Shown here one piece after another: positions 12,801 to 51,900 of a stretch of 64,000 nucleotides of DNA. Source of the stretch: Magallana gigas (Eukaryota). Position 1 is the first letter of the stretch. The number at the start of each line of letters is the position of its first letter. The position numbers were made by a program, and so were the translations under genes. The stretch spans positions 20,956,001-21,020,000 of the forward strand of contig NC_088859.1 of assembly GCF_963853765.1 (NCBI RefSeq), read 5' to 3'. The notes under the pieces were generated by a model that saw nothing but the letters and a program-made list of their open reading frames with translations, ran no database searches and had not been told where the DNA came from.

Positions 12801-12928
12801 GGCGTACTGTTGAAACGCACTGCTAAAAAAACATTATGTCCTGTAACTGTCGTTCTTTAATTGCTTTGAAAAGTCATTTATACCGACAACGTTGACAAAT
12901 TGAAAAAAGAGGAGGACTGACTCTTAAT

Positions 12929-13463
12929 TATGGTAGCAAAGGTCTGCCACCAATTGTCAGATGATTATGTCGACTTGTCAGATATTTATGTCGACTTGTC
13001 AGATATTTATGTCGACTTGTCAGATATTAATGTCGACTTGTCAGATATTTATGTCAGTTTGTCAGATATTTATGTCAGCTTGTCAGATCTATACGTTGAC
13101 TTGTCAGAAAATAATCATTATGACTAGACATTAAGATAATTATGACAAGTTAACATAATTATCTGACAAGTCGACATAGAGATCCGACAAGCTGATATAA
13201 TAATCTGACAGAAAGAAGAAAAAACAAAATGGCCACTAGTTTGAAGAAAATTATCATGTCGACATGTCAGAAACTATTTTGTTTACTTTATAGCACAAAT
13301 TGGGCGTGGAAACGTTTTAGATGTTGAATTTTTAAACCTATAAATAAGTAACAAGTCGACATAAAGATCTGACAAGTCAGCACAACTATCTGATAAGTCG
13401 ACATCAAGATCTAACAAGATGACATAATCATCTGTCAAGTGGTGGCAGAACTATGCCACCATA
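12929..13463. mobile_element. Foldback/MITE-like element with long inverted arms built from a 21-bp tandem unit (TGTCGACTTGTCAGATATTTA)
   Basis: Left end TATGGTAGCAAAGGTCTGCCACCAATTGTCAGATGATTATGTC matches the reverse complement of the right end (TATGGTGGCATAGTTCTGCCACCACTTGACAGATGATTATGTC). About 7 direct 21-bp units at 12955-13110, inverted units at 13130-13210 and 13350-13440. Flanked by CTTAAT on both sides (12923-12928, 13464-13469); alternatively a TA duplication. Confidence 0.85.
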
Positions 13464-16400
13464 CTTAATTTGTGTTTTTGATAAATTTTGTCGTACCAGT
13501 TTTTTCATATATTTTATTTGCTGACATCTACACGTAGATTTGCATCCGATTCACAATGTCTATCAATTCGTATTTTACCAAACAAGAAACTGCTTGTTGA
13601 TATATTTCAAAACATTGCTTTCGAATGGTTAACCATTTTTGACTTAATCGACAAACAAAGCAGAGGAAGAGTAACTGCGATGTCTGGACGATGTGGTTTC
13701 TGCACAAGGACATGCGCATGCAATTATATCAGAATCATGGTGCTAGATTTCTGACAACACGCACGAATTTATTAAATGGAAATGTTTGAACGTGTTGTGA
13801 TGGGTAATATTTTCACAGCCTTCTAAGCCGATTTTTGTTTAAGACAGTCTTTTGCGCAAAAATAAAACATTCTTCTCCGCAGTCATGCAAATATATCTTC
13901 CTCCAAAATCAATTTCAATCAAAAGCAAACTTCAACACCCTTAAGTGTAAATGACAAATTTTCGAGCACCAATAAGAACTCATTTCCTTAATAATATGGC
14001 ATTTGCAACTCAATATCGTCGTGCAAATTGCAAATGTATAACATCTCTCGGTTCAACAGTTTTACATCCGAAGGAAGGGAAAGTTGGAAATCTTTTCCAG
14101 TTCAGCGTCATCGATAACTGCATTTTCTGATAATGGCTCGGAGAAATCTAGTTACAGAATGAGGCAGATAGACGGTATGTGTTATGACAATTAAATGGGA
14201 AATATCAAGAACGCTCTATAACAGGAACGGAAGAACTTCCATAAAAGATTTTGACACACTGGTTACATAGAGAGCGAGGGAACGAGTTGAATGGGAAATT
14301 GCCAACTACAGAAAATATCTATCTCAAAACGTGCTACAATAACTGTAAGACCGTCCCTTAACACAAAATAGGTGTTTATTTTAAGACACTGATCAAAAAT
14401 AAGGTAATTGGTTGTTTGGTGTTCTATATATTCTGAGATTTAGACCCCGAAATTTTGTTACTTTATCGATGCAGTAGTCAATGCGTAATAGCTTGCTGGG
14501 CCATCTATCACAAATAATTGTCTAAAATAAAAACAGTTTCAAAGAAAAAGTTTATGGTAGAGTGTCCATGTCGATAAATTCTGAAAACATTTTGGTCATT
14601 TCGTCGATTAACGCCATGTTATTTTATGTAATGTTTATGTCTTTCCAATAAATCACTGGCTATCAGTTCTTGTATCATTTTATAGTCTCTAACTTATTTG
14701 CCAATTCTTCAATGGCGGATGCTCCTCGGACTATTTTGTTGGTAAAAGTATTGTTTGAAACTATTATATATTGAAGAATCCGAGTAAGTGACCAATATTC
14801 CTCATCGAAATTAAACTTTTCAGTGAGATCGAAGGAAAATAAATCCATAAAAGTATGAACATAATTGAAATATAAGGGTACATGTACTCCGACTGAGCTA
14901 ATGCTTTTAGAATTCAGTTAAGTGAGACTACGATTTTTCTAACTAATTCGAAGTATCGTTCGTTCTCAGAGAAGCTATTAAACGATTCCCATCACGTTCT
15001 GTTGATATAAACTTCCCTTTATCGAACAGACACACACACTTACGTGCATACAAACTGATGATTATTGCTCTTAAATAATTTTTTTTCTAAACCAACTTTT
15101 TTGTTCGTTTATTCCGATTCGAGCCACAGTGAATACACCTTTTTCCTTATTTTTTTTCTATCTTCACTTTATCTGAATTTAACACTTTTTTTACTTCAAA
15201 TATTACACCAACTTGTATGTTGTAGCGTCCATACAAGTATAAGGAACACAAACTTTCTCACAGTCAGCGGAATTAATAATTATGTTGACCAAAAATATAA
15301 GCGATATGCAGATCATATAATTGTGTACTTTACTTATATAAAGATAGATTTGTCTACTTACCAGTGAGCTGGAGGATATTGTTTTTCTATAGTTACACCG
15401 TCCTCGGACTCTGATGCTAATGTTCGATGTGGGAATTTTTATTTGTCCGTTTCCATTTGTAGATACTGAGAGACATATTTAAGTGTACGCGTTTGAGTTC
15501 GGCTGAGTCGATATTTGTTGGATTTCATCATGCATACCAATGCACTCGTCGAAAAAGAAAAAAAAAATGAGGGGCATTGCTATATTTCTTGTTTACTTTT
15601 CTCCTAATAAAAACAAAACTTAGTTAGTAAAATAGAGGTGAACAAACACAGAGTCTTCAAAGAAAAGCAAAAAAAAAAAATCACTTTTTTTGTTCAATTG
15701 TATACAAAGTCACTCGTATTGATGAAATCGTTTATTGGTGTAAAGCCACGATTAATAAAGAGTTCATTCGAAATTCAAACACAAGGGAATTGAGACAGAT
15801 CAAATGCAATGATCCTTGTTGAAAGAAGGCCGATACAGTACATACAAAGATCATGAATTGTCAACAGTTACAGCTGTTACTCGCAAAGAGTCTGAATAAA
15901 CTCAATTAGTATGAAAATAAGATACGTCAAACATTGAAGGAGGTTATTTTGAGACACGCTTTTAAATCTACCTTCAAGTGAGGGGTATGGACAACACCAG
16001 ATATAATCGTTATGTAAAGTATGATTACAAACTTGCAGTTGATCCATTTGTGCATTTTAGTTTTATATTAGCTTCCCATTCTTAAATAAAATCCACATAT
16101 TATCGCCAAAAGATGAATTAAAAATTAGAGAGCATTAAAATTACATGGGCGCCACAAAGCGAAGCATCACCTCGCCAAATGAAATTTTGTGGGGGGATGC
16201 ATTATTTAGGACTATATAATTGAGGGGATCAAATATTAAAATATTTCGTTTATTCCTTTCTCCCATGCATGCTCTGGTACCACACCAAACCGGTAATGTA
16301 TTTTGTCAAGTCGTACATAACATTTCTGTTTTAAGTGTTGTAATTTCAACGACACCGTGTATTTTGATAAATATTGATCAGAATTACTTGGAAATGAATA

Positions 16401-23293: not shown

Positions 23294-26149
23294 ACTTAGA
23301 GAGATATTAACTTACAACATTATCAAACTTCTATTACATTTTTAAACACTTTACCTGTAGTCAGTTAGCACATTCTTTTTAATTACATGTACATGCATCA
23401 CCTAATTAATTTCTTTTCTCCCCTTTCATGCCACTATAGTTACCACAGTTAGAGAGATTTTTTACTTTAAATGGGAGACAAGGCCCATATATGCACGTTT
23501 CTTTTCTATTTGATTCAAGGGAAAATATGCATTGAATGTGAAATCAATTCAAACTTTAAAAGTTTTCTAAATAATTTAGTTCACAAGTTTCTTTAAATGA
23601 TTGAGTGTTTTACTAATGTACTAATTAATACATTCATAAGAAAATTAAATTAGTGTCACCGTATTTCGCTTTAATTTATTCATAAGATAACCACTTGAAC
23701 ATGCACCAAATTGATCTTGTTAATGTATCAAACTTCGTAAAATATTCCAAGTGCATAATGAATCGAAAATATCATCAAATACCAGAGTGACTTATAATTC
23801 CCCAAAGAAATAAATAAATGTCCAAAATGCAGTATGTTGGAAATGTGTCTCAATTTATAGCATATAATTCTGCACGAGTAATAATGATAAAATATAAAAT
23901 GGATGGTGTAGCATTTTAGGCAATTTCATTTGGTTATCAATCATATCCACGATCGAATAGAAACAAAACGAAATAAAAACTGTATCATACATATATATGT
24001 ATGCATCATACCCATTTCACATTCGAAACCAAACAATGAAAAGTTGATCAAATTTCACAAAATTCTCACTTATTATTTGCACTATTAAGCAAACAGCAGG
24101 AGAATTTCAATTTTAAGAATGCATTTAAGCATTGAATGCTTATATTTTTATTTTTATACTAATGTCTATTTGTATGAAAAACTGTATCTCGCTGCTATAA
24201 AGCCATTATATGCGCTCTTAGTCAGGGATATGAAACAAACATGGAACAGCTATTTTAACATGTTATTTAGTTAGCTTCCGCGACAAAAAATATAGTGCCA
24301 GAAACTTTGTTTTTATATATATTTATGATTTTTTTTCAAAGTATATATCAAATTGGTTATGTAAGATTGAAAGTTTCATGTAATCTTACAAAAATATACA
24401 CGAGAAGACGTTTGTATCTGTGCTCATGGCGCATGGATTAGCAAAGTGTATTCATAGAAACTGAACGTCGCAGATTTCCAATGCAAACATAAGGGGAAAT
24501 ATACATTGAATGAAAACATTGATAGGTAAACTAAAGTATTGTACATCCATAAACCAAAGTGGTTATGGAAACATTTTCTCCAAACCTTGCAAAAGGTCTT
24601 GAACAAAGGCCAGTATCTTTCACTAAAAATGACCTTGACCACCCCTCCTCACGGCACGTTCATCTTATTGTATTATAAGAGAACTTTTTTATTTCAACAA
24701 ACTAGTTTTTGAAATATATATAATAATCCTGAAAAAAAAATAATTGTATCTATGGTGAAGATTTTATTAAAAGTTCCTCTTTCTAATACGCAAGATTTTG
24801 ATACCTCTGCTATAGTACTATACATGAACTATGCTAAACACAATTTTTTTTTATCAGACAATAAAACTAAGTAAAATTACTAGTTCCTTTTATGCAAATA
24901 TATTCACTTTCACACGCTTTGCTGCCACGCGCTTTGAAATTAAGCAGTGTTATAAACCTAAACTCTTAGAAAAATTCAATAATATTTCAAGACCATTCTT
25001 ATGGAAAGTTCAAAGAGTCTTTGACAAGAAAATAAAACACTAGGTAAAGCATAAAAGACAAAACAAATAATAAAACTTTAAGATTCCATTTTTGCAAAAA
25101 TCACAAGGAAATGAAAATATTAATTTCAAAACAATGCTATACTGATGTTTCCTTTGTTCTGCTTTTTTATAAATCAAATTTCCTTGAATGTTTTGAGTAA
25201 AGAGGGTTTAAATTTCTATAAACATTCCAATACCGGGTTGAAACGAAGTTTAAAAAAGCCCAAACTTTCCTACTGTAACTGTAAAATGGCTAATAAATCT
25301 AAAAAGATCACGCATAATTCAAAAATAACAAATATATCAACTGTGTCATTCTTTTCCTTGCGACAATATTCTATTAATCTTATGTACATGTACATGTAAC
25401 AGCAAACCCGGTATGTTGTAAATGCAATGAGACCAAATTAAATTCATTTTTTTAAATATGAAAAAAACATGTACCTGAACCCTTTATACATATATCGGTT
25501 TACCGTAATTTTGAATAGAAAACAAAAAAGCATTGAATGATACAGTTACGCATATATTGAGTAAAAAACAAACAATCAGAACTGTCTAATTCATTTTATC
25601 AAGAATACAATAACTAAAAATAATTTACAAAAAAACCCCCACTAAAAATACTTCGACAAACACAATATTTATGGAAGATAACAATGTACAAATAGTTCAC
25701 TTTTAAAAAAAAATAAACTCTCTTTTTTTTCTTTCTTTCCGAATTTATCAACATTGAAAAAAGGGGCGAGGAACAATACGGGATAAAAAAAAAGTTACAG
25801 AAAAGAGAAGGCATAATTGGCCAAATCATCAAAAAGAAAAAGGTTGGCATAACTTTGTAGACTTGATATGCAATATCTGGTACAAAAGATACATCCCAAA
25901 CTTTATCATTTGCAATGTTTTAAGCAGGAATTGGTTTTGTTCATCTACTTATGTGTAAAAATCAAATGTACTGAAAATATTTTATTTAAGTACATTTAAT
26001 CATATACACAATTAAGAACTGATCGTTAATATCGCACCCAAGATACAAAGTTTGTTTCTTTACTTTAATTACACGGTATGTAACTTTCAAATTTATCTAC
26101 CTAGCACATTTAGTAAAAATTACAATCTAACATGAACTACATGTAAGAT

Positions 26150-26646
26150 TGCGTTTGACTTTGTTCTTCTTGGTAAAACTCTAAGAAAAGTCAAGTTGGC
26201 GGCAAGACACTTTGATCAATAAACTAAACATAAATCCCACGCATATCAAACCGGAAAGAGTTCGCACCTTTTTTGATCCATTTTGACATTTTCATTTACG
26301 AAAAACTTGAAAGATTCACCAGAAAGTATGTCATTCACACATTGTGGCAATACCATTTTCTGATAACCGTGTGAGAAGAGAGAAATCCAAGATAGTCGAG
26401 TTTGTTTTTAGAGCCACGAGGGAATACATGGTAACTTCAAAGGTTCGACAGCTTCAAAGGGCAAACTTTATACAATGTATTCAGGGAATTCGGCAAAGAA
26501 GTTTTCATCAATCTTATCATCGATGAAAACACGATGTGCAAGCAGACGTCCAGCGAGTTTGAAACCTAGCAACAGGTAGAAACTGCTCAATACATACTAT
26601 ACCGACATCGCTCTTACGCTTACACAAAGTTTGGACTTAATATCGT
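26150..26646 (-). pseudogene. Degenerate coding-like (LRR-like) segment in the intron-6 equivalent of the BFAR pseudogene
   Basis: Homologous to 49640-50106; starts after a TTTTAAACAG acceptor; multiple stops and indels. Confidence 0.3.
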
Positions 26647-28524
26647 CTGTTTAAAACAACTCAGTTTTTTTTGTTGAAATAGCTTGTAAATCTTGATTGC
26701 AGATGTCTAAACAAAACTAAAATGGTTTGGAAAGCTACCGCTAAATTTTCAATGGAAACGTTCATTCTCTTTTGAGTTTCACAAACACGTGATATTTTTC
26801 CATGAAAACTGATGGAAAAAACTTATTAAAAGACTGAAACCTTGTATATCACAATGCATACCTACAACATATTCACTGGGAAGAGTTTTTTAAAAGTCAT
26901 TGTTTCGAGGAATGTCAAAAATTGCACAATTTACAACCATCATAGAGCAGAAAAAATAGTGGACGTCAAACCACACCCAACGAAATTTGGACACCACCCA
27001 ATAGAGCAGTACAGTGGAGTAAGTCAAAAACTCAATTTCTTGTTTGAAACTGGGGCCATCATACTGAATGTAGATATTATATCAATTTATAAACATTAGC
27101 CTATATCAAAATAAAAATCCGTGGTTCCCTCATAACTATCATTAAAATCGGGAAAAAAAAACTCGAAAGAAAGAATTGTTACAAATTATTGATTTAATCA
27201 ATATTACTGATTTAAACTCATGCATTAAACTTTAAATTTTCTCATTTTTTACAATTTCATCATCAACAAAAAAACCAGTTGGATAAGGTCGCTGTGTTCA
27301 TCGATCTGCATGCTGTTGTCAACAGTCAAGAAAAGTACGTCAAAAATGAAAAGAAACCTGGAGTCATTCCAATATTAAAAAATCACGACAAAAAACTAAG
27401 TAGTTCATAAATGTACTTATATTCAATTTTTTATAAATTTTTCTTAAATTGTTTACGAATACCGCTCTATTAAATGTTTTGCTTCTAGAACTGTTTCGCC
27501 GAACTGCTTTCATTTGAGTTTCACTGCATGTTCGCAGAACGATTATGATCATTCAAAAAGCCTTACAAGATTACACCTTTACGACTTTATTGCATGTTGG
27601 GCGATTCTTCATTCCATAGAGACAACCAGCAAGATGTAAAATTCGATAGCATCTTTGAATAGAAGACTTTGGGAGAGCGATGGGCTCACGTATGGTAGAA
27701 GTAAAAACAAAGACAAAACTCGATAAAGATTTATCTTAGTTGAATCACAAAGCACGAACATAATCCCATTGAAACCCGAAACGAAACTACTTAGATAAAG
27801 AAAGCAGAACAAAGTGAAAATAGTTTATAATTGGTTTCAGATTTATTGATCTTGTTGATCCGATCAGAACTCAATTATGTATGAATAAAAATGTAGTTCA
27901 TTTTATCAGACCTCCAGGATGGAACATTACAAAAAGAGGATACATAAACAAGATAGGAGAGAGATTAAAACAAATAATGAAGCTTTTGATAATTTTCATT
28001 TTTTGCATAGCTGATGAAAGAACATGACAGTTTACACCAAAAATGGATGTCCGTTTATAAAGGCCTAATCGAAAATTATCTGTAAATGTGATGACTGTGT
28101 CAAATGAAAATTAATTTCATCTTTTGAAATAGTATCTTTTACAAATATTTCGTATAATTTTTATTGACTAATACATTACATTAATCACTGTTTTTCAATA
28201 GTAGCGTTAATCTATTCTTTACCTTAATGAAAATGCTCAAAACTTCTTTAGAAGACCACAAAGAACATTTCACGAAATGAATTGATTTGTATTCTTGCTG
28301 TAGTAGTATTATCAGTTTTATAACACCATGCATCCCTATTGACGCAACATATCCTCCTTCGTATAGGACAGACTTGAGTTCTTTCGAAAAACTACCATAC
28401 ATTTTAGGTTGTTCATATATCCTTTTGCTAAATCTTTCTGAAAGTTTTTATACCTTCCTTACGATAGTGTTTCTTCTTCATATTCATAAAAATATTATAA
28501 ACTTTGTAAAGCTGAACTGTAATG

Positions 28525-28683
28525 TATTCTCTTTTGAGAAGTGGACAGGCATAGCCTACATCCATGAAGAATCGCCCAACATGCAATAAAGTCGTAAAGG
28601 TGTAATCTTGTACGGTTTTTTGAATGATCATAATCGTTCTGCGAACATGTAGGCTATGCCTGTCCACTTCTCAAAAAAGAATA
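28525..28683. mobile_element. 159-bp TIR mini-element (MULE-like) carrying a captured inverted copy of local host DNA
   Basis: 37-bp TIRs (28525-28561 and 28647-28683, 1 mismatch); 10-bp direct repeat AACTGTAATG at 28515-28524 and 28684-28693; interior 28564-28649 equals the reverse complement of 27527-27612 with 2 mismatches. Confidence 0.85.
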
Positions 28684-31600
28684 AACTGTAATGTAGACAC
28701 TAGCTGGCTTTTTGCGTTTTCACGCATCAACAATACAAAAATTGAAATTGCTCAAATTTTTCACGATAAAATGTTTTGTGTTGACCAAAATTTTTATTTA
28801 ACAAAAATACTTAAAAGTACTAATTTAATGTCCTTAAAACAAGTAAAATCCTTTTAGTCTATTTCAAAATTTTAAAGTTCAAGTACTTCAATAACCAGTA
28901 TGCCTGAATCGTTGTCGTTTCTGGGAATAATCTTGACATGTATAAGACATTAAACGAGTCCAGTGCAAAACGAATCTTGGTAACTAGGAAAGTCTTATGT
29001 CTGATCAGGAACTAAGTCGATAATGAGACGAAAGCTGAGAACAAATGATAGGACTGTACAACACTTATAGAGCAGACAGAAAAATCACAGTTTAGTAAAT
29101 TTACAGTCTAGTCCAATACATCATTACGGAACGAACTTTGTTTGGCAATTTGTGTAATGGAATTATTATACTTACTACAAGAATATCTTTCGACAATTTC
29201 AAAGACAAAGATAAGAGACGATGACAATTCTCTTAATTTTGCTTTGTAATTTTGTGTATACTAGTATGTTAAACGTTAACTAGACACTGCTACTCCTTTT
29301 TGTGTTTTGAAAATAATAGAAATGCATAAAACAGAATTTCCATTTGACTAATGCAATACAAATGAGTTGTCCACGGGAATGCAATTTGGACCATAAAACA
29401 AATTCATTACACATTTATTTCCTGCAAAACTGTCGATTTATCTCGGATTTAATTACCGAGTCATTCATTTCTAGAGTTACGAAAAGAGCCAAATTATAAA
29501 AAAGAAATTAAGCCAAAAATTAAAACCGCGATTAATGCTGTTTGTTCAATAAATTAGAAAAGGAATCATTTCTGTGAAGGCGAGCGTAAAGATGTCAATT
29601 AATGATAATTTAATTGACCGTATCTCTCCCTCCATTGATGAAATAATTGAATACAATAATAATAAGTTAACTGCTTAATTGAATTTGAATGAAAAAAATT
29701 TGAAAGTAGACAACGCTATGGAAACACTCCTCCAACTTTCAATAGTCGATAGTCATGCACTGGCGTCATATCTATTGAATTGTCTCTGAATTAAGTAACT
29801 TTTATTACTTTTGGAAATTGCCATTTTTCAAATGTTTCCATTTTTTTTAAACCGATGATTCATGTTTCAGAAGCTAAACAGGCATTTTCAAAGATTGAAC
29901 GAGCAATATATGTCCACACTTAGTATTTATACGATGTTAATCAAATGATTTACTATTTGTATTTCTCCAAATACGTTTTTGTTAGAATTTTCCATGTAAA
30001 AAGAATGAAATTGCGTAAAATATCTATCTGTAAAAAAATTGGTTGGAAGAGACAATCAATACTTAACACTGACACATCTCTTCCTTATATTGAATTTATA
30101 AGCATATTTGGAAGTCTAAATTAAACGTCATTCTGCAACATAACTGGGTGTTCCGATCAGTTCACAAAGATTATAATTAAAATGAACATGTATTCCACCA
30201 TGTGGCCACTTCAAAATGCTATTCATTATCTAAGGGGAAAAAACCATGATCAAAAAAGTAGGGATTTAAAAAAAAAATAAAATAAAAAAATAAAGAAATG
30301 CATACACAGTAGAATTTATACGTAAGCTTCCCAGAAAACACCTTTTTAAACAATAAAAAGCTTTCTCTTGGTAATTAAAGCGGGTATGAAGGTAGCGTGC
30401 AAACATGGTTTTTTCCATAATAGTCACTACCTTTAAAACTAGCCTGTCTGAATCCTGAAAGAGGCATTTGTTCATAAATGCGTCTTAATTTAAATGTTTC
30501 ATTAATTATACATGATTATAAATGATTCAAATCAATTTGCATAAACAGGAAGTGATAAAAACTCAATATTTGACAAACATGACTAGAAAGACGGATTTAA
30601 ATCTTAACACTCGCGGTTTTGCCTGTCAAACACGCTGATGTAGGAATAACATATAACCTCCATAAATTTCATATCGACTATAACATTCTTTACTAAATTC
30701 AATTAATCAATAGATCCATCAATTCAATTACATCAATCAATCAGTGAATAAATTTTCGACAATGCGAGAATATCTTTTTCGTATACTAGTACGCAATTCA
30801 TTTTAAAGGCAAATGGACACCATTGGCTCGTCGAGGAATTGTGTCTTTAAACAAAATGAATGAATGAAGTTTACCAATTTGGTTCTATAATAGCTTTTCC
30901 TCCCTATCCGAACGTTTTTACGTTATCAAACACATTTTATATTTTATAAAAAGAGACAAGTGATAACCGTCCACAAATTTGCTAATCAGCCTGTTAAAAT
31001 TTTGTGTGGAGTACATCATGGTATTCCAAATAAACGAAAATTGTCAACTGATGTTTGTTTACGATGTGACCTTTGCGCACGAATCTCATGATCGACAACC
31101 GACCGATCACTGCAGAAATTCTACTGGAGGAAAGGTTGCTAAATAACCAATTACATGTATAAATAGAGATCTGCATACACAGCTGTAGCCAAACTTATTA
31201 CTGAAGAATGTACACACAGGCGTAAGTCAAGAATACATCTGGGCAGTCTGACATCGCTAAGAGTGCAGTGTTCCCAGTGCATTTCGTTTAACTCCTAGAG
31301 GATGGTGCCAGAATGAGATACACCGGTATGTCAGAGATATAAAATCTCGATTTATGATCGAATTGTAAGGCATGAACTTTCATAAAACAGCGGGAGTCAA
31401 ATCAAGTTCCTTTTTCCAAGTTCCAAGTTCCTTTTTCCTGTCTAACATTTGCCGATGATTGCACTGTTAATTGAGAAGTAGCTGAACTTGTGACTGAGTA
31501 ACAATTACTTTTTAACAAAACTGCAAGTGATTTTTTCCGCCATGAAGCAAGTTAAAAAAAACTCTTTAAGTGTTAGAATTTCCACATAAGAAACAAATGA

Positions 31601-33343
31601 ATATATATGCAAATAAATAAGCACTTGTTTCGAATATTTTGAATATTAAGTTGCCATATTGCTTTATTGCACAGAATAATAACATATATGGTTTGCCATT
31701 TTGATTTACATACTTATGTGTTCGTACACGAGAAAAGAAAAAGCTAAATATCATGCAATATATCTGACATTTTACTGGCAACTTAGCACACGTTATCAAT
31801 AAAGGTATAACCCACAAAACAACAGACACAACACAGGGATCTCCAAGCACCTGCCAGGCTTCTTCTTAGTATCATCGGCAGCAAGTTCGCTGTAAACAAG
31901 CTATTTCCTTTATTAAATTAACAGCAACGGCAACACTTACATGCAGAGTTCTTCATTAACAGTGTACTTTTCATCCTAATACTAAAAGACTCGTCTCTCA
32001 TTAAATAAGATGAACGTAACACTGTGCATTATTACCACATGGCAAGGACAAAGATGAACATGTATTAGATATAACACACGGTGTTATAGGCAGACAGAAT
32101 GCAAAAAAAATCATGATTTGGTTCAATTGGTTTACAGCACATAAATTGAACGCATTGTTTCTCTTCTGAACAAAACGACATCTTTAATGGTCTTTACCAT
32201 CTAAATTTTAAAGCATTAGAACACTAACTCAGTCCCTATTATTCGTCTTTAGACAGAAATTTGATTTGCATAAAAGCCTTCTAGTTACCAACAAAATAGC
32301 CCTCTAGTTACTTAATGAAAGATGACAACTAATTCGTGGAAGATACAACATACACAAATATGATGCCAAAATCACCATATCTGCAAAATTAAAGAAAAGA
32401 AGGTTATGGCAGTTCCAATCCTGACCAATTAATTTAAAAAATTCTAGTATTTGCAAACGTTTGTAATATTTCCTAATTAACACTCTTATGTAAAAAAATG
32501 TTTATATATACTGGGAAACTTGTGTTAGCATGTTTGATTATGTAAATCATGGGTTTTTAATGAAGTAGATCCGTGGGGGAAAACTATCTCTTCCTGAGCT
32601 TGAAGAATCATATTGAGATTTCAAAGAACACATATGAATGCTAAACAAATGTTAGAGGTGGAGCAATTGTCTGGAAAAGAATTGCACAATGTAATGCAAG
32701 TTTAAATTGTAGATTTAGCAGCATTAATTGTTTGCGTCAGCATATGATGCAAGTAATTGATCTGTCTGTGTTAATCCATGCTCTCCAATTTCCCTGCAGT
32801 AATTGACTTCTGCAAAATATTTACTGAAGTTCTGGAATAACACTAACGATTAGACAGTTTCTTCCGCAACCTGAAATGTAAAAACCTCTAAAAATACCGT
32901 AATAAAAGTTCACACTGGAATATCCAAGGGATGCACATGCAGGTTTTTTTTTTAAGTTAAGAAGTTCGGAAGAAATGTTGTCTTGACAGTTTTAACAGGT
33001 TTAACTGCCACTCTATTGACTGTTGGATCTCCAAAAACAACGAAAAAACAAGATTGTTTTCGCAAAAGCGACTCTAAGGAATATTATTATCTTCTGGGCT
33101 TTGAACATTAAAATAGTGATTTTAGAAAGAGAAGGAGAAACAAATTTATCTGATTTTTAAGACTAAGTCTACAGATGTACTTTAAAGCCAATGATTCAGT
33201 GTCAGTTTTTATATGACATCAGTTCAATAATAAAATTAGTCAGCACTGACAAATGTGAAATTTTAACGTTAGCAGACAGGGTTCACACTGTGTTGGAAGA
33301 TATCACACTGTATAAACTTAAGATATTCACAAGGCTTTTTAGA

Positions 33344-33349
<6 letters not shown>

Positions 33350-33400
<51 letters not shown>
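33350..33400. repeat. (TC)n microsatellite
   Basis: Direct reading. Confidence 0.95.
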
Positions 33401-33402
<2 letters not shown>

Positions 33403-36400
33403 GTTTGATTAGGGTTTATTTCCCCCCAATTTCATAATTTACAATGGTTGTTTCTATTTCACATTGGTGGGTCTTCTCAAACAACCTTCTAATGAGGATT
33501 AATCTCATTCCCCTGGGTCTTAACAACCTGCTAATTAAAAAAAAATAATTGTGTTCTCATCTCCTTCATACAGGTGTTTCCCAAAAATGTGATGAATTTT
33601 ATTTTTGCATCCAGTTCTAACTCTATATTATTCACGTACAGGCGGTTCGTGGTCATTTGGAATTCTTACAAGGGCTATATACAAACTTCTCTTATAGTTT
33701 TCAGCCCACACCACATACTTTGCATAAGTTTTTTTTAGCATTACATAAAAAGCTACTGTGTTCTTCTTTTTCTGAGAAACCGTTTAGTCCAGTAAGTGAA
33801 AAGAGTTTTCAAATAAAATAAAGTGACCATACAATTATTTTAACTCATCTAATGTACAAAGGTCTTTAAATGAAAATTTTCAAAGGTTATATTACATGAC
33901 TTTGTTAAAATAACATGCCAGATGAATACTGGGGATGTCTGTGTTCTCTGAATATGTGGTACGAAGGAATGGCAGAAATAGTTCATCATATTAAAAGAAA
34001 TACACACAGAGGAGAGTAGTTCTTGGAAAATCTTTCATGCCATACACAAGGAACAGAGATTGGCCAAGATGCAAAGCCTGTAAAATAAAAGTAAGATTTA
34101 CAATATAGAATAAGCTGGTAAAATGACAATATAATTATCGTAACCTCAGCTTGAATATCATATGAACAGCACTAGCTAGAAAGGGCTGACAAACACAGGG
34201 ACAGACATTTAACTAACACACACACATGACAAAAGGACAAGGGCAAAGACAAAACGATACAAGGACACTCAATGAAAAATACAAGATCATTTTTAATATT
34301 TACTCTTTCAAAACAAATCCTTGATTTAGAGAAGAAATTGAATTGCATCAAATTTTAATCTTACAACTTTTATCTAGTTGTCTTTGTTGCAAATTTTATT
34401 AAAATCAGGCCAGGAAACCTGAAGACAAAAGATCTCCGACAATCTTCTTTATGATTAAAGGCATTTATTCACAACATTATCAGATGAAAGATATGTTCAA
34501 ATACCAAAATTTTCTGCTTATACAGCTAAACCTATGATCTTTTAAATTAGATTTTTCATATCGTGTACTTCAGTAAGTTCAAAACATCATCAGTTGGCTT
34601 TATTTTGGATTCAAGCAACTGCTAGACTGTGGTTTTTGGAGATTTTAACAAAATTTGCATTGTTTTGTAAGAGATGATATAGGGTTTACGAGAACACCAC
34701 CCAAAAACCAGGTTGGATCTTCACAGCTGATCCAAGGTACAGTTTTTCCCTGTTACATAATATTTCATAATGAATGCTTTGTATCTCTTGTAACTGAACA
34801 TGCTTAAAGACACGTGCTAATTAACTGGTGCAGACAAGTCACTCGGATGCCAAATCCTCCAAGAAAGTGTTTTTAAACATTTCACAACTGGAAGCTATTA
34901 AAGGACGCATCCTCACTTCAACTGTTTGTCACATGAATTAAGTTGAATTTCAGACACAATTTTGTACAGAGAAACAAACATCACATAAAAATTCAACTTA
35001 AAGTTTGATAATATGAGTCTAATGATATAATGTCAACTGTACAAAAGAGGCTATTATAAATTTCAGCAATATTCTGATACAGGTCTACATTACATATATA
35101 CCTACCATGGCAATGTAAAATAGCTGCTACATATATATGTGCACAAAGAGCCTACGTTTTAGAACTTCAATGTTTTAGACAACAAATTTTAGGGCAGTAA
35201 AATAGGCTTTATTTGCATCATCAACAGAAAAAGTTATTCATAAGGGTCTATCAACAACCTTTTTTTTCTGATTCATCACTGGCTCATATATACGACAAAA
35301 ATCTGTAAGTGTTTGCTTTTGAATGTTAATGAAATCACATACAACTCCCATAAAAATAAATCATAATTTAATCTATGTATAAATCACCAATCTTTATGCT
35401 ATTTTATAGCTAGGTGCCATAAAACAGGGCAATAGAAAAGAAAAACTGAGCACTTTACACCCAAGTCCTGGAGTTACTATTATACTGATTACCGGCGGGA
35501 ATTAAAATGACTTGTTTTTGCACCATAATTCACTGTATCGGTATTCATCAAAACAATGTTTTACTGTATAGATGAAAATCAAGCTTGCTTGATTTATGCA
35601 TTATTTAGTCTATGATACAGAACAAATTTGACAAAATGATAAATATTTGAAAACAAATAACAATAAAACATACAGTATTTCACACTGATAGTTTGGTCTT
35701 GTTTTCTTTCACTCTTTTTAAATATTTAATTGCTAATTATTGCTCCATAACAGTTTACGACATGGTTGGTGGTTTTGTATTATCGAGGCTCTCAATCACC
35801 TTGAACACCCAGAGAGAACCCGGGAGCTTCATATTAAACTCCTTCAGCTGCTAAATAGCCTTGGAAATGGCTTTATTATGAAAAACTTTGGTCACATTTA
35901 AAATGGTCTCAAGACTCGCATTGTCTGCAGCAAAACGGAGTCTTCTATCTGCAAAAAACAAGAGAGAGTATACAAATTGTTGGGTTTTTTCCCTTTGTCG
36001 CCAAATTGGTTTCAAATTTTCTATTAGAGAAGTAACAAATGGTACGAAATATCGGGCCTTTTGTTTGAACACTGATGCTTGATATGACCATACAGAGTTT
36101 AATTGAATTAAGTGCCCCATTCATTGTGGTAGGCCATTTATAAAAAAAAAAGAAGCTGGAAATCAAAGACAGGAGTAAATATTGTAGCACTTGATGCTTT
36201 AAGCACTCTACAGCCAAATATTGGGCAGAGTTCCTGACTCTTGTGGCTGGTTAGGTTTACATTTTCTTTGATAAATATTAGCACTATTGGTGCTCTTTGG
36301 CAGGCATTCAAGCCAAACTAGCTACTTGAAACTAAATAAAAACCCGGTACACATCGATCACAGAACACCCTCAATGCTTCACAGTAATACTGCTATTTAT

Positions 36401-39514: not shown

Positions 39515-40120
39515 TTTTTATACCCCACGAAAATAAATGGGGGGGAGGGGGGGTAAATAGGAATCACTTTTTGTCCGTCCTTCCGTCTATCTGTGCAAAA
39601 TTCGTGTCCGGTCTATATCTTTCTGATGGAGAAACATTATAAGTTCTTAATGCATACAAATCATTTGGACAAAGTAAAGGTCACTGGCAGGAAAAGTGCA
39701 AAATTTGTTTCCGGTCCACTTTGGAATTTCTTACTTCACACAAAGATTGCTTATGACCTGAGAGTGTGTAATGATTTGTCCCTTGTCAATGAACGAGATA
39801 CATTGGGAGTTTCTATTTCATAAAAAGATTCCTTAAGACCGATTATGTGTCATTAAACTTGACCCAGGGTCAGTTGCGCAAGTTTAAAGTCATATGAAAA
39901 AATGCTTTATTCCTGTCTGTGTCATATCTTGTATAAATGGAAATGAGTAAAAGCTAAAGTTTGATATAAAGATTGCTTGTAACCTGTAAATATACCCTGC
40001 CTTGTCTGACTCACTATAAGAAAAAAAGCATCCATTTTTCTCTAATAGAGAAATACTTGAGTTAAAATTCTTTTCTTAGCTGGGGTATCATCTGTGAGCT
40101 TGCTAACAGTACCTTTTAGA
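39515..40120 (-). mobile_element. Non-autonomous Helentron-like (HINE) element, decayed
   Basis: TTTTTATACCCC...GGGGGTA hairpin-like end, (GTCC/GTCT) short repeats, CCTTGACCCAGG-type internal motifs and a GGGGTATCATCTGTGAGCTTGCT end motif resembling bivalve HINEs (recognised from memory). Confidence 0.55.
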
Positions 40121-40355
40121 TGGTCTAGTGGGAGGACTGCCCCCCCCCCTTTTTCGAACCCGCTTGTAACCTGTAAATATACCCTGCTATGTCTGACTCA
40201 CTATAAGAAAAAAAAAGCATCCATTTTTCTCTAATAGAGAAATACTTGAGTTATTAATAATTCTTTTCTAAGCGGGGGTATCATCAGTGAGCTTGCTAAC
40301 AGTACCTTTTAGATGGTCTAGTGGGAGCAATGCCCCCCCCCCTTTCTCGAACCCC
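39975..40355 (+). repeat. Tandem duplication, about 187-bp unit, two copies
   Basis: GCTTGTAACCTGTAAATATACCCTG...TCGAACCC starts at 39975 and at 40162; near-identical with a few indels. Confidence 0.9.
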
Positions 40356-41583
40356 CTTTAATTAACGTTTAGAAAATTAATTTTTGAGGCATTCTACCCA
40401 CCATCACACACACTTTTATTATGATTAAATTAATTATATACATATTACTTGTACATATATGATGTGCTTTATAAAGTGATCCTAAACATGAAGTAATTTA
40501 AACGAAGAACTTCCCAGGTATGAAAATAATACTGTGAAATTGAGTCTCGTTTACGATTTTTTGATCTTACTTTTATCATATTGATAATCCAGTCACATTA
40601 AAACTATTTCCCTTCTCCTTACACTCGTCAGGGTCTGATAGACCTGTATTGTATCAATACTGGATCATTTCACTTGACCTCCACATTTGCATACGATCTA
40701 AATATACTGTTATATACAAAAAGATATTCCTTTATCTGTTTAATGAGTAGTGCAACTTTTCAATACTCAGTCTAGAGGTTACATAGGAAACAGGCATGAA
40801 TTACTTTTTGGTCTCCATTTGAAGAGTTCCAATCAATTTTCTAAAGCTCTAATTGGTAACAAAAAATAATCATGTAAAGATGACCTTTTATCATTACAGG
40901 ATCTGTCAAGCTCTGACAAGTGTGAGGAGAAGGAGGTGGTTTTAATCAAACTGATGGACAATCTTTTTGCGACACGAAGTTGTGACGGAAGACCTCCTCG
41001 TTGCTTTGCAACGAGCTCGGCTCTAGTTACACTTTACGTTTTATCATTTGAAGAGGTTTAGAAACTCTTGTCCTTATATGCGAAAAAATCGTCAAGACTT
41101 GTGAAATAAAGGTTATATCATGTAAAGTTATAAGACCGGGTTGACCTAGTAATATATCCACACGGACGGCAATTTATTAAGCATATAAGGAAGCAGGCCA
41201 CACCACTGCAAGAATCTATTACCTTGGAAATATAGATAGCTGCATGCCAGAAGTACGTGTTGATAAGAGAACTAAAAAATCTTTAGGGTCATTTATTATG
41301 AAACTGCATGATGACAGTTCCCTTCCCAGATTCTCATTCTACAAGTAATAAGCATCTTAAAATGCACGTTCTTTTATATGATCACTGTAAAATATATGAG
41401 CTTTTTTAAAACTTCCGTCATCTAAAGCATCATTTTTTCACGTACTAGCAATTATGAACCTCCATTCACTGAGGCCAGAATACTATGTGAGTATAGTGAT
41501 TATGATCAGAACCGGCGCCATTAAGAAAACTGGAAATGGCACCGGTTCTGACGTTTCCTGGTAGGTAAAATATCAAAATCGTT

Positions 41584-46091: not shown

Positions 46092-47620
46092 AAACAAGAG
46101 GCCAATTGGCCTTAACGGTCACCTGAGTAGCATATATCCCATACACAAACTTGTCATGGAGTCTCAAATATGCATCTAATTAATTAGGTTTCATACTGGA
46201 GTAGAAAAATTATAAATTTGTAATGACAACCACATTTAATTCAAAAAGATCTGTGAAACCTATAATTTTGGTGAAAAACTAAAAGATCTGGTCTACAAAA
46301 TAGAGAATTCAGTTTTCCTTTCAGCTGTGTGGGAGTAAAGAAGATAATTTTTTAACGTTATATGCATTAACATCTATACATCCATTTTGGCCCTGCCCTA
46401 GAGTCAAAACCCATACCCAAGGGGACATGAAAATTAAAATTTCAGTAGAAGACTTCCTGGTAAACATAATTATTAGTCGTTTTTTTTATACAGATGTGTG
46501 AGAATAGAGAAAAAGATTTTTAAACATTATATGCATTAACACTTTATTGCCATATTGCCCCCCCCCCCCCTTCATGTCCTGAACCACTGACCCAGGGGCC
46601 ATGAATTTCACAATTTAGGTAAAGGAGATTGTGGATATCATAACCATGTATTCAGTTTTTTGCCTACATATGTGGGAGTAGAGAAGAAGATTTTTTAAGA
46701 TTTAAAACATTTTTACTATATGGCCATATTGGCCCCACCCTAGAGCCTGAACACCTAACAAAGGGGTCATGAATTTCACAATTTTAGTAGAGGGCCTCGT
46801 GGACATCATAACCATGCATTTAGTTTTTAACAAATATATATGGGAGTAGAGAAGAAGATTTTCTAAGATTTAATACATTTTTACTATTTGGCCATATTGG
46901 CCCCACCCTAGAGCCTGAAACCCTGACCGAGAGGTCATGAATTTCACAATTAAGGTAGAGGGCTTCATGGACATCATAACCATGCTTTTAGTTTTTAACA
47001 AATATATATGGGAGTAGAGAAGAAAATTTTCTAAGATTTAATACATTTTTACTATTTGGCCATATCGGCCCCACCCTAGAGCCTGAAACCCTGACTCAGG
47101 GGTCATGAATTTCACAATTTAGGTAGAGGGCTTCATGGACATCATAATCATGCATTTAGTTTTTAACAAATATATATGGTAGTAGAGAAGAAGATTTTCT
47201 AAGATTTAATACATTTTTACTATATGGACATATTGGCCCCACCCTAGAGCCAGAACCCCTGACCCAGGGGCCATGAATTTCATAATTTTGGTAGAGGGCC
47301 TCATGGACATCACAACCATGCAACCAGTTTTTTCCACACATGCGTGGGAGTAGAGAAGAAGATTTTTGAAAATTTGGCTTTTTTTGCATATTTGGCCCCG
47401 CCCGTGGCACCCCAGGGGTGGTAGAGCCATAAATTTCACAATTTAGATTCTTCTTACCATAGAGATGCTTCACACCAAAAATGGTAACGATTGGCCTGGT
47501 AGTTTTCAAGAAGAAGTTAAAAATGTAAAATTGTTAACGCACGACGCACGACGCACAACGCACGACGACGGACGAAGACCAATTGCAATAGGTCTCCTGA
47601 GTGACTCAGGTGACCTAAAA
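46092..47620 (+). mobile_element. Non-autonomous Helentron (HINE) with a central array of about 168-bp satellite-like units
   Basis: 5' AAACAAGAGGCCAATTGGCCTTAACGGTCACCTGAG; units start at about 46382, 46550, 46724, 46892, 47060, 47228; (ACGC/GACG)n tract; 3' ATAGGTCTCCTGAGTGACTCAGGTGACCTAAAA palindrome. Confidence 0.9.
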
Positions 47621-48994: not shown

Positions 48995-51900
48995 CTAAGT
49001 TCTTTCTTTCCAAATTTTATCCACATTGTAAAAAGGGGTGAAGAACAAGACGGAATAAAAGAAAAAGTCACAGATAAGTGACGGCACGATTGGCCAAATC
49101 ATTAAAAAGAAGAAAGTAGACATTAGACCCTTGCCATAACTTCGTAGACCCGCTATGCAATATCTGGAACAAAGGAAAGATATATCAAAAAATAATATTA
49201 TGTTAAATGTTCCTATCTAACAAAAATCATGCATTTGCATATACGTGTAATTATGTATGTATTTGTAGAAATACCTTGTGTAAATACATTCTCATGAGCC
49301 AAAAGTATCCACTTGTTTTTATATGGGTTTTGCATTCAAAATAAAGAAACTGGTTCTTTACTCGTACAGGACTGTCGATTACTCATCTTCTCTAACCAAG
49401 GTTTTCTGATCCGCACCGCTTCTCACAAACCCTTGGCATATGGTACTATCAATAAATAAATTCAGTAAACCTCAATCAAAACCAAGGGAAAAAATATCGA
49501 CTTTTGATATCAAGATATGCCAAGGGTTTGTGAGAAGCGGTGCGGATCAGAAAACCTTGGCTAGCGAAGATGTCGATTACTTGGTATGTAGCTTTCGAAT
49601 TTATCTTTATTACGCATTTATTAAAATTATATTTTCACATAAACCGAGATTGCTTTCTTCCTTGCTTTTGTAAAACTTTGAGAAAAGATAAGTTCGCAAC
49701 AAGAAACTTTGATCAATAACTAAACATAAATCCCATGCAGAATCCACACCATTTTGATGGATTTTGACATTTTCATTTACGAAAAACTTCATTCACCAGA
49801 AAATATGTGATGCACACATCGTGGCAACACCATTTTCTGATAACTGTGGGCAAAGGGATAAATCCAAGAGAGTCAAGTTTTTTTTAGAGCCACCAGAGAA
49901 TACTATATAGCAGATGGTACATGTAACTTCAATGCTTCTAAGCTTCGTTTATATGATATATTCAGTAAATTCGGCAAAGAATTTTCCATCAAACTCTTCA
50001 TTGATAGAAATTCGACGTGCAAGCAGATCAGCAACAAGTGTGCTATTCAACATGGAAGCTACTGACATCCTTCTGACGCTTGCATATACTTTGGACTCAA
50101 TATTATCTGTTAAAAACAACTCTTGTTTTTCGTTTAACTATCTTGTATATCTTAATTACAGACGTTTGATCATAAAAATGGTGTTTGATAACAAACGTTA
50201 ATTTTTTTTCTAATTTTACAAAAAATTTTCTCCTAAAAACTAAAAAAAAAAGCTGAAGATTCAAACTTGTACATCACTATGCATACTTACTCTTTATTCA
50301 TTGGGAAGAGCTTTTTAAAGGCCATAGCTTCGAGGAATGTCAAAGTTGCGCAATTAACGAACATCATAGAGCAGATATAAAAGTGGACGTCAAACCACGC
50401 CCAACAGAATTTGGACACCACCCAATAGGGCAGTATGGTGAAGTAGGTCAAAAACTCGATTTCTTGTCTGAGACTGGGGTCGTCATACTGAAAATAGATA
50501 TTGATATCAGCTAATTAACATAACATTCAAAATGAAAATTCAAGGTTCCCTCTTAACTACTATTAAAATCGGCAAATAAAACCTTCATGCTCAATGGAAA
50601 GAACATTGTAACACATTTAATTTTGATAACTGGTTCAAACTCACGCAATAAACTTTTATATTTGCACAGCTCTTAAACTTTAGTCATTGACAAATAATTT
50701 ACACAAGCCTAGCTAGGTCGCTTTGACCATTTGCATCATGTTGTGTCAAAAGTCATCAGTCAATTAAAGAACGTCCAAAATGAAAAATAAATGCAGTAAT
50801 TCCAATATACATTACGATAAGGAACATAAGAACATGTATTGACGTTGTTTTAAGATTTCTTTTTTTTAACGGCGATGTGTCTATACGGTTTGCTTCCATA
50901 ATGGTTTCAATGCACCATTTTCAGTTGTTGTTGTTGCTAGAACGATTGTGGTCTTACATGCAGTCTTAAAAGATTACACCTTTACAACTTTATTCCATGT
51001 TGGGCAATTCTTTACTCCAAAGGGATAGCCAGCAAGATGTAAAATTCGATAGTACATGATTGTATGTGATCATTTTTGGAAAAAACAATAGGCTTAAGTA
51101 GGAACTCGCTTGAGCAACAATAGCCAAAACTCTTATCAAATCAGCTTTATGGAATCAATTACTAAAATAATTTGAGAATTTAGTAGAGTAGATCTTGTTT
51201 AAAAATATTTTCTATTGTTCTCCATATTTTTATATATGTTAAATATAGGATCTCTCATGATTTGCGATGGTATATGATTTTTATCCAACGAGTTGTGTGT
51301 AACGTAATGATTAACTATGACGACACGTGGCGTAAGAACACACAGTGGAATATCAAAAATTTATCCCATGAGTGATATCCACCGTATATTGGGATAAACA
51401 TGTGATAATAATAAATATTGAGACACTTTTAAAGATTCTTGGAATGTAAAATTTATAAAAAAAAAAATAAAAATTTTAATAAATTTAGTAGGTCCAATAA
51501 AAAAAATAGGAAGACTTTTTACATAGCTTTTTTTACTTACTTATAACGTCATTTTATCACCAAATGTGGTGGACATAATTTATCAATAATTTCAATTAAT
51601 TTAAACTCAAAAAATTAAATATATTCCTGTATATCTAAGAATTATTTAAAATTCAAAACTGCAAACATGGGGTAACTGTGCACGGCCACATTTTGTGTTC
51701 TGTGAACAAAACCATATAACCATATAATGTCGAAATAATGTTTCAAAGAAACCAAATAATACTGAAACCTTAAATTTAGTACTGCCATTCTATGTACCTA
51801 ATTATGATGGAGTAAACTATTTTGCTGAACAAATTAAGACAGACTACCTCATTAAAATTCACTAAATCTGATGACGTACATTGCCGGACATCACGAAGCA

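What the first reader, a model, noticed from the sequence alone, without database searches (positions are those of the whole stretch)
28515..28693. Tiny TIR element whose entire cargo is an inverted copy of host DNA from 1 kb away
Structure: 10-bp direct repeat, 37-bp TIR, 86-bp interior, 37-bp TIR, 10-bp direct repeat. The interior is the reverse complement of 27527-27612 at 84/86 identity and shares a 3-nt microhomology (ATG) with the right TIR. The donor is ancestral host intron DNA, because its more diverged homolog lies in BFAR intron 5 (about 50940-51015), so the direction is host to element and the event is recent. This looks like a snapshot of Pack-MULE-type capture, or of templated gap repair after internal deletion of a MULE using a nearby template. 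Pack-MULEs are established in plants; I am not aware of such a local-capture case in bivalves.
Basis: partly seen in the sequence, partly recalled or inferred. Interest (0 to 1): 0.7.

Follow-up and report, generated by a model that had tools for sequence, protein, structure and literature searches.

The report
Palindromic oyster MITE with locally copied filler
A 76-base palindromic mini-transposon in an oyster intron-like region took up, exactly at its centre, an 83-base inverted copy of DNA lying 1 kb upstream, most likely through repair or replication template switching; it is a clean example of a process already described in animals ("single-copy Pack-TIR").

Summary
The site holds a 10-nt direct repeat, 37-nt inverted termini (36/37 complementary), and an interior that is the reverse complement of 27527-27612 at 84/86.

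- **The termini are a young, abundant family.** There are 336 exact 26-mers in the 564-Mb genome. Members have 9-bp target-site duplications and long (about 230-270 bp) TIRs in the larger copies. Most copies are 60-85-bp palindromic deletion derivatives.
- **The donor is host DNA.** It is low-copy (three genome matches, all in this window) and ancestral, because it lies in a collinear, about 70% identical tandem paralogous segment. Both differences between copy and donor are derived in the copy.
- **The precursor can be named.** The element equals the family's "cc-type" 76-bp palindrome (8 exact copies elsewhere) plus 83 nt inserted at the symmetry centre, with the same 3-nt microhomology at both joints.
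- **The event is rare in this family.** Among about 70 members inspected, no other carries unique host DNA.
- **The insertion is polymorphic.** A precise empty-site contig exists in another oyster run.

Best reading: a template switch at the palindrome centre (snap-back on a resected end, or fork switching), not Pack-MULE-style capture followed by movement. This matches the cis-biased, microhomology-bearing single-copy Pack-TIRs of Tan et al. 2021. Modest interest; new member of a known kind.

The parts
28515..28524 (.). Left target-site duplication. The family norm is 9 bp (28516-28524); the 10th base matches by chance.
   Evidence: The empty-site joint 28514->28684 with a 12-nt ambiguity appears in run X11.
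28525..28561 (+). Left 37-nt terminal inverted repeat, identical to the family consensus.
   Evidence: The inner 26-mer has 336 exact copies in the genome.
28562..28563 (+). CC, the native 2-nt centre of the cc-type 76-bp palindromic element.
   Evidence: L014, L028, L010, L022; L015 and L030 in reverse. One search finds 8 exact genome copies of this centre.
28564..28646 (-). 83-nt filler copied from 27530-27612 in inverted orientation. Its boundaries can slide by 3 nt because of ATG/CAT microhomology.
   Evidence: The identity block 28564-28649 matches 27612-27527 at 84/86. Both differences are derived in the filler when compared with the paralog.
28647..28683 (-). Right 37-nt TIR, with one difference from the consensus (28677 A, consensus G).
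   Evidence: table 3 shows 28677 A>G in other copies.
28684..28693 (.). Right target-site duplication.
27527..27612 (+). Donor: unique host non-coding DNA, bounded by CAT at both ends (27527-27529 and 27610-27612).
   Evidence: One search gives only three genome matches. Searches show it is collinear with the paralog.
50939..51052 (+). Diverged paralogous copy of the donor region (84% identity), inside the old tandem duplicate 48839-54912. It shows that the donor is ancestral.

Best explanation
**Step 1 (shown).** A minimal, 76-bp palindromic non-autonomous transposon, made of two 37-nt termini joined by CC, inserted here and duplicated a 9-bp target. It belongs to a young family with 9-bp TSDs and long TIRs, MULE/Rehavkus-like in structure.

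**Step 2 (inferred).** A 3' end became stranded at the symmetry centre, where the sequence can form a hairpin or cruciform. This happened either through a break at the hairpin tip or through a stalled replication fork.
- The top-strand 3' end, ending in ...CCATG, paired through 3 nt with CAT at 27610-27612 on the same strand, 0.95 kb upstream.
- That strand would be the resected 3' tail folding back on itself, or the lagging-strand template behind the fork.
- The end copied 83 nt leftwards to the next CAT (27527-27529).
- It then re-paired through the same 3 nt with the right half of the element.

The product is TIR-CC-[inverted 83-nt host copy]-TIR inside the original TSD. This is a single-copy Pack-TIR made by transposition-independent gap filling. 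Nothing suggests a function or later mobility.
For: **Structure and family**
- The family has 577 first-look candidates and 336 exact 26-mers, with 9-bp TSDs at about 25 loci.

**The precursor**
- Removing 28564-28646 leaves exactly the cc-type palindrome.
- That palindrome occurs 8 times elsewhere, on five chromosome-scale contigs including this window's own (C7), each with its own TSD.

**Joints and geometry**
- The same 3-nt microhomology is present at both joints.
- The copy is inverted and in cis, which is the geometry that same-strand fold-back or fork switching predicts.

**Donor**
- The donor is unique and ancestral.
- Both differences are derived in the copy, which fits error-prone synthesis or later drift.

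**The centre is a rearrangement hot spot**
- Centres vary between copies: cc, ccatgg, ccacgg and ctacatgg.
- Some copies have inserts built from snippets of the element itself (L013, L029, L044, L039).

**Polymorphism and precedent**
- A precise empty site appears in an independent run.
- Tan et al. 2021 (PMC8277862) describe the same class. It is single copy, 57% of cases lie within 15 kb of the parent, and 68% carry microhomology. Breakpoints there are skewed to the TE interior and attributed to fragile sites.
- Snap-back and SD-MMEJ chemistry is described in PMC4912351, PMC2943611 and PMC5728401.
Against: - No allele carrying the filler-free 76-bp element at this locus was seen, so the order "insert first, capture later" is inferred only from the subfamily match.
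- Templated insertions attributed to polymerase theta are usually a few to tens of nucleotides and come from within tens of bases of the break. Here the copy is 83 nt from 951 nt away, which fits long resection or a fork-based switch better. The enzyme is unknown.
- The filler interior was not covered in any of the four runs laid (depth 0 to 0.17). Only the right TIR-flank joint of the reference allele is independently seen, in run X15 (record 23).
- Only about 70 of several hundred family members were inspected.
Confidence: 0.7

Rival explanations
1. Excision-triggered abortive gap repair. Transposase cut an element (76 bp or longer) out of this site. Synthesis-dependent repair from the sister copy re-copied both termini, slipped onto the nearby 27.5-kb template, and rejoined by microhomology.
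For: - The family is young and evidently active: TIRs are near-identical across hundreds of copies.
- The many deletion derivatives with microhomology joints are the classic products of abortive gap repair.
- Filler DNA is known from Ac/Ds and P-element repair (established knowledge; PMC3260210 was listed but not read).
Against: - Both breakpoints coincide to the base with those of the pre-existing cc-type subfamily. That is a coincidence if the deletion arose here from a longer element.
- If the element was already the 76-bp form, this rival differs from the best explanation only in what made the break.
- Tan et al. found that breakpoints skewed to the TE interior favour breaks inside the element over excision.
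Confidence: 0.17
2. True Pack-MULE-type behaviour. The element acquired the fragment while sitting at or next to the donor, then transposed about 1 kb to its present site carrying the cargo.
For: - The element has an intact TSD and near-perfect termini, so it looks mobilisable.
- Even smaller derivatives (62-65 bp) have moved.
- Cut-and-paste elements often reinsert locally (established knowledge).
Against: - The filler exists only once outside its donor.
- The donor site shows no footprint or element remnant.
- No other inspected family member carries unique host DNA.
- In Tan et al., Pack-TIRs that had transposed (the multicopy ones) were always located distally, not beside the parent.
Confidence: 0.06
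3. Assembly or consensus artefact. A chimeric or fold-back read introduced the inverted 83 nt at a palindrome during assembly.
For: - Palindromes are error-prone in sequencing.
- The filler interior had essentially no depth in the four runs laid.
Against: - The copy differs from the donor at two positions, which is not expected from a chimeric read of the same molecule.
- The joints are clean, with microhomology.
- The right TIR-flank joint is present with 0 differences in an X15 contig (record 23).
- Logan contigs break at a 37-nt high-copy repeat anyway, and the tool itself states that a hole in coverage proves nothing.
Confidence: 0.03

Closest known systems
Single-copy Pack-TIRs formed by transposition-independent gap filling (Tan et al. 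2021, Nat Commun, PMC8277862)
   Same: - TIR-element termini and TSD enclose a non-TE insert whose parent lies in cis within a few kb.
- There is microhomology at the joints, the element is single copy, and the breakpoints lie in the interior of the element.
   Different: - The host element here is a minimal 76-bp perfect palindrome and the insert sits exactly at its symmetry centre.
- The family has 9-bp TSDs (MULE/Rehavkus-like), whereas that survey found no Pack-MULE in 100 animal genomes.
- Molluscs are not mentioned in the paper's main text.
- The orthologous filler-free element was not observed here.
Plant Pack-MULEs
   Same: - Mutator-like termini with a 9-bp TSD flank host-derived DNA.
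   Different: - The cargo is 83 nt of non-coding DNA, not gene fragments.
- The element is single copy, with no evidence of mobilisation after capture.
- No MuDR-type transposase has been linked to the family.
Synthesis-dependent MMEJ and polymerase-theta snap-back templated insertions (PMC2943611, PMC4912351, PMC5728401, PMC5068794)
   Same: - An inverted templated insert is copied from the same strand.
- It is primed and resolved by 3-nt microhomologies at a sequence that forms secondary structure.
   Different: - The insert is longer (83 nt) and its template much farther away (951 nt) than typical events.
- The polymerase is not identified, and a fork-stalling or template-switching route would fit equally well.
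Abortive gap repair with filler DNA in Ac/Ds, P and Mutator elements
   Same: - Internally deleted elements keep only their termini, show microhomology joints, and occasionally contain foreign filler. The rest of this family shows this pattern abundantly.
   Different: - The precursor here appears to have been already minimal and mobile, so excision need not be the trigger.
Center-break revision of DNA palindromes (established knowledge; term found in papers)
   Same: - The rearrangement is confined to the symmetry centre of a perfect palindrome and destroys the perfect symmetry. The spacer grows from 2 nt to 85 nt.
   Different: - It was described for long transgene or PATRR palindromes, usually as deletions. 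Here a 76-bp transposon gains a templated insert.

Membership tests
Single-copy Pack-TIR (gap-filling type) | TIR-TE termini plus TSD enclosing non-TE sequence | tested here: met
Single-copy Pack-TIR (gap-filling type) | The insert has a parental copy, and the direction is parent to element | tested here: met
   The donor is collinear with the paralog, and both differences are derived in the insert.
Single-copy Pack-TIR (gap-filling type) | Single copy and close to the parent in cis | tested here: met
   One search gives three matches only. The two copies are 951 nt apart.
Single-copy Pack-TIR (gap-filling type) | Microhomology at the breakpoints | tested here: met
   There are 3 nt at each joint relative to the cc-type precursor. 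At the right-TIR joint 5 of 6 nt match.
Single-copy Pack-TIR (gap-filling type) | Filler-free TE at the orthologous locus in other individuals or species | tested here: inconclusive
   One search shows an empty site and an unresolved allele with 55 other letters. No locus-anchored filler-free element was seen, because contigs break in the repeat.
Pack-MULE (plant sense) | Captured host gene (exon) fragments | tested here: not met
   The donor is non-coding. The ORFs over 27.2-27.7 kb are short, and none of the ORFs of 75 aa or more tested across the window, including the one nearest the donor (26830-27096), gave a Pfam hit attributable to the donor.
Pack-MULE (plant sense) | Mobilised with its cargo (multiple copies or a distant parent) | tested here: not met
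MULE superfamily, including the Rehavkus group | 8-11 bp TSD | tested here: met
   A 9-bp TSD is seen at about 25 loci. The criterion comes from PMC6446971.
MULE superfamily, including the Rehavkus group | Long TIRs | tested here: met
   The termini of L023, L034, L035 and L036 are inverted repeats of about 230-270 bp.
MULE superfamily, including the Rehavkus group | MuDR-type DDE transposase in an autonomous copy | tested here: inconclusive
   - No PF10551 hit lies near the listed TIRs.
- The only large TIR-bounded copy (L035) encodes broken DUF6589+PHD ORFs and no MULE domain, even at E<=5.
- Homology between DUF6589 and DDE transposases was not tested.
MULE superfamily, including the Rehavkus group | Rehavkus hallmark: a PHD finger within the transposase | tested here: inconclusive
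   - The PHD match is at or just under the Pfam cut-off (22.3-23.7 bits against 24).
- In L048 it lies inside the DUF6589 match. In L035 it lies next to it.
- The atlas lists a mollusc DUF6589+PHD cluster.
Polymerase-theta / SD-MMEJ templated insertion | Short template-proximal insert (typically under 30 nt, within tens of nt of the break) | tested here: not met
   The insert is 83 nt, copied from 951 nt away.
Polymerase-theta / SD-MMEJ templated insertion | Dependence on POLQ | not testable with these tools
   This needs genetics.

The most novel reading that the evidence does not exclude
The perfect centre of minimal palindromic MITEs may be a hairpin-tip fragile site that repeatedly primes template switching.

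- This family would then show the whole series, from self-templated snippets to capture of 83 nt of host DNA.
- That would give a base-resolution snapshot of how Pack-TIRs are born.
- It would also be the first Pack-TIR in a MULE/Rehavkus-like family in an animal reference genome.
- A second inverted, cis capture in another MITE of the same oyster genome hints that bivalves are rich in such events.
Probability: 0.35. Interest if true: 0.5.

Novelty: new member of a known kind. Interest (0 to 1): 0.3.

Why it matters
How TIR transposons pick up host DNA is still debated. Here the precursor (a 76-bp palindrome), the donor (unique, 951 nt away, ancestral) and both joints (identical 3-nt microhomology at the symmetry centre) can all be read directly. 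That makes it a tidy natural example supporting break- or fork-induced template switching over transposase-driven capture. It also extends the phenomenon to bivalves and to a family with 9-bp TSDs. It does not reveal a new mechanism or a function.

Tried and rejected
**Explanations rejected**
- *The interior is a dispersed repeat or a small nested TE.* The donor has only three genome matches, all in this window, and has no termini or TSD of its own.
- *The TIR is unique, so this is a one-off replication slip.* It has 336 exact 26-mers.
- *The helicase and PHD ORFs in L035 are Pack-like host cargo.* Diverged helicase and DUF6589 homologues are linked at 6 or more other loci, so they are element genes.

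**Searches that led nowhere**
- *Other copies with local fillers.*
  - Family members with larger interiors turned out to be ordinary internal sequence (L023, L036, L037, L038), a nested LINE (L034) or a nested copy of another repeat (L018).
  - The junction classes CCY (13 loci) and CCATGM (6 loci) are all deletion derivatives.
- *An autonomous MULE.* 61 PF10551 hits exist, but none lies within 10 kb of the TIRs listed on C1-C3.

- Trailing N in a pattern is trimmed, so flanks cannot be displayed that way.
- Only the first 100 of the 336 TIR positions are listed (C1-C3), so the census is partial.
- One Pfam call failed on a reference with stops and was repeated without it.

**Reads**
- They could not show a filler-free allele at this locus or cover the filler.
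- The many 83-102-nt "skips" have sides of 34 nt or fewer inside the TIR, so they come from other genomic copies.
Full report
**Observation.**
- AACTGTAATG occurs at 28515-28524 and again at 28684-28693.
- Between these lie two 37-nt arms, 28525-28561 and 28647-28683, that are 36/37 complementary.
- The stretch 28564-28649 is the reverse complement of 27527-27612 at 84/86. The mismatches are at 28613 and 28616.
- A 28-mer of the arm gave no match in 100 shuffles of the window.

**The termini belong to a large, young transposon family.** The window is G000:C7:20956001-21020000 of a 564-Mb, 29-contig assembly. Run labels say oyster.
- A search with the whole element gave 577 first-look candidates.
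- The inner 26 nt of the arm occurs 336 times exactly, against 0 for the reversed control.
- In about 25 copies read with their flanks, the arm always starts at TATTCTC and is bounded by a 9-bp target-site duplication. The tenth matching base in the window copy is chance.
- Larger members (about 1 kb: L036, L023) have terminal inverted repeats of about 230-270 bp.
- L034 is such a member with a nested LINE carrying endonuclease and RT domains.
- Most copies are far smaller: two 37-44-nt arms joined head to head with a centre of 0-11 nt (cc, gg, ccatgg, ccacgg, ctacatgg and others).
- Some are asymmetric forms of 62 or 65 bp in which one arm is cut back at a microhomology. Each of these is found at several loci with different TSDs, so even they have moved.

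**Superfamily.** A 9-bp TSD plus long TIRs is the MULE pattern (criteria from PMC6446971). I could not link a MuDR-type transposase to the family.
- 61 PF10551 hits exist in the genome, but none lies near the TIR positions listed for C1-C3.
- The one large copy with perfect arms and a perfect 9-bp TSD is L035 (7.8 kb). It carries two sets of ORFs:
  - broken ORFs matching DUF6589, with a PHD-like finger next to them;
  - on the other strand, DEAD and Helicase_C ORFs.
- Diverged homologues of both genes sit 2-4.5 kb apart on opposite strands at six or more other places. The helicase is therefore part of the element group, not captured cargo.
- In one relative (L048) the PHD match lies inside the DUF6589 match. 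A mollusc DUF6589+PHD protein cluster exists.
- This is a resemblance, not a tested homology.

**The donor is unique, ancestral host DNA.**
- The region 27440-27700 has three matches in the genome: itself, the copy in the element, and 50939-51052 at 84%.
- The third match is not a dispersed repeat. 25562-35988 is collinear with 48839-54912 at about 70-90% identity, an old tandem duplication, and 26068-27649 aligns with 49576-51052.
- ORFs matching RING and SAM domains occur between 18 and 60 kb.
- At both positions where copy and donor differ, the paralog agrees with the donor. The direction is therefore host to element, and both changes arose on the copy.

**What the precursor was.** Deleting 28564-28646 leaves arm+CC+arm.
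- That 76-bp cc-type palindrome is the most common centre class in my sample: L014, L028, L010 and L022, and L015 and L030 in reverse.
- Its centre occurs 8 times exactly elsewhere, on five chromosome-scale contigs including this window's own (C7).
- The window element is therefore a cc-type copy with 83 nt added between CC and ATG, at the axis of symmetry.
- The insert begins with ATG and is followed by ATG. In donor terms, the donor block is bounded by CAT at 27527-27529 and 27610-27612. Both joints therefore share the same 3-nt microhomology. At the right-TIR joint the match is 5 of 6.

**Mechanism (inferred).** Reading the top strand, the left arm ...CC(ATG) continues into the complement of the donor's top strand.
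- A top-strand 3' end stranded at the palindrome centre must therefore have used the same strand, 0.95 kb upstream, as its template.
- Two situations provide this geometry:
  - The 3' tail of a resected break folds back on itself (snap-back, SD-MMEJ; PMC4912351, PMC2943611, PMC5728401).
  - A nascent leading strand stalls at a hairpin and switches to the lagging-strand template behind the fork.
- Either route explains why the copy is inverted and local.
- The centre of this family is visibly unstable. Besides the varied short centres, L013, L029, L039 and L044 carry inserts assembled from direct and inverted snippets of the arms themselves. The window copy looks like the rare case where the switch landed outside the element.
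- With its two arms the present element folds as a long hairpin (-43 kcal/mol, z = -12).
- I cannot tell what made the 3' end, nor which polymerase acted. At 83 nt from 951 nt away, the event is larger and more distant than typical polymerase-theta inserts.

**How common is it?** I read about 70 family members in four sets:
- 27 distinct loci (the other three of its 30 duplicate the window element or L003);
- 12 fetched regions;
- 13 loci of the junction class CCY;
- 6 loci of the junction class CCATGM, one of them the window element itself.

None but the window copy carries unique host DNA. L018 carries 743 nt of another repeat, a copy of which lies at window 59610-60236. This is not a systematic cargo-carrying family.

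**Population evidence.** Eighteen runs from seven studies hold the locus. I laid four on 27300-29300.
- Run X11 (organism B) has a contig joining 28514 to 28684 with a 12-nt ambiguity. This is a precise empty site, so the element is an insertion and is polymorphic or lineage-specific.
- X11 and X15 also have contigs in which 28518 and 28687 are separated by 55 other letters that the tool does not print. I cannot explain this allele.
- X15 has a contig covering 28656-28771 without a difference, which confirms the right arm-flank joint.
- No run covered the filler interior (depth 0 to 0.17). The many short "skips" have sides of 34 nt or fewer inside the arm, so they come from other copies.
- A filler-free element at this locus was therefore neither shown nor excluded.

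**Comparison with what is known.** Tan et al. 2021 (PMC8277862) found 370 Pack-TIRs in 100 animal genomes.
- They are mostly single copy. 57% lie within 15 kb of the parent, most of those under 5 kb. 68% carry microhomology, and breakpoints are skewed to the TE interior.
- The authors attribute them to transposition-independent gap filling at fragile sites.
- The window element meets every one of these features except the orthologous filler-free TE, which is untested.
- That survey found no Pack-MULE in animal reference genomes, and its main text does not mention molluscs.

**Verdict.** It is a clean new member of a known class rather than a new phenomenon.

Noticed in passing
L035 (G000:C1:54951300-59500); relatives L047-L051: A 7.8-kb element with this family's perfect termini and a 9-bp TSD encodes two sets of ORFs. 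One set is broken DUF6589+PHD ORFs. The other, on the opposite strand, is a DEAD/Helicase_C helicase. Diverged homologues of both genes are linked at 6 or more other genomic places. This looks like a two-gene, Rehavkus-like DNA transposon group whose putative transposase is an uncharacterised Pfam DUF.
   Followed up: partly
window 28518-28687 (alleles in runs X15 and X11): Contigs in two runs join 28518 to 28687 with 55 other letters in place of the element. This is a third allele besides the empty site and the reference. The letters are not shown by the tool, and I have no explanation for it.
   Followed up: no
L054, L055, L061 (62 bp); L066, L067, L070 (65 bp): Asymmetric derivatives that keep one full 37-nt arm and only 23-28 nt of the other occur at several loci, each with its own 9-10-bp TSD. 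About 23 terminal nucleotides therefore seem enough for mobilisation.
   Followed up: partly
L013, L029, L039, L044 (element centres): The centres contain 27-141 nt built from direct, inverted or tandem (30-nt unit in L029) snippets of the arms' inner ends. These look like self-templated synthesis at the palindrome centre.
   Followed up: partly
window 25562-35988 and 48839-54912: An old tandem segmental duplication (about 70-90% identity, collinear blocks). ORFs matching RING and SAM domains lie within 18-60 kb, which fits two BFAR-like paralogs.
   Followed up: partly
window 46322-47375: A tandem array with a period of about 170 bp. The self-matches are offset by about 169, 343, 511 and 679 bp, at 72-82% identity.
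   Followed up: no
window 39975-40358: Two adjacent copies of about 190 bp at 92% identity.
   Followed up: no
window 12924-13052 and 13340-13468: A 129-nt inverted repeat at 84% identity, 288 nt apart. It is possibly another TIR element.
   Followed up: no
window 59610-60236; L018:761-1503: A repeat with GTTCGC-rich subterminal motifs. A copy of it (85-95% identity) lies nested in the centre of a family member on C10.
   Followed up: partly
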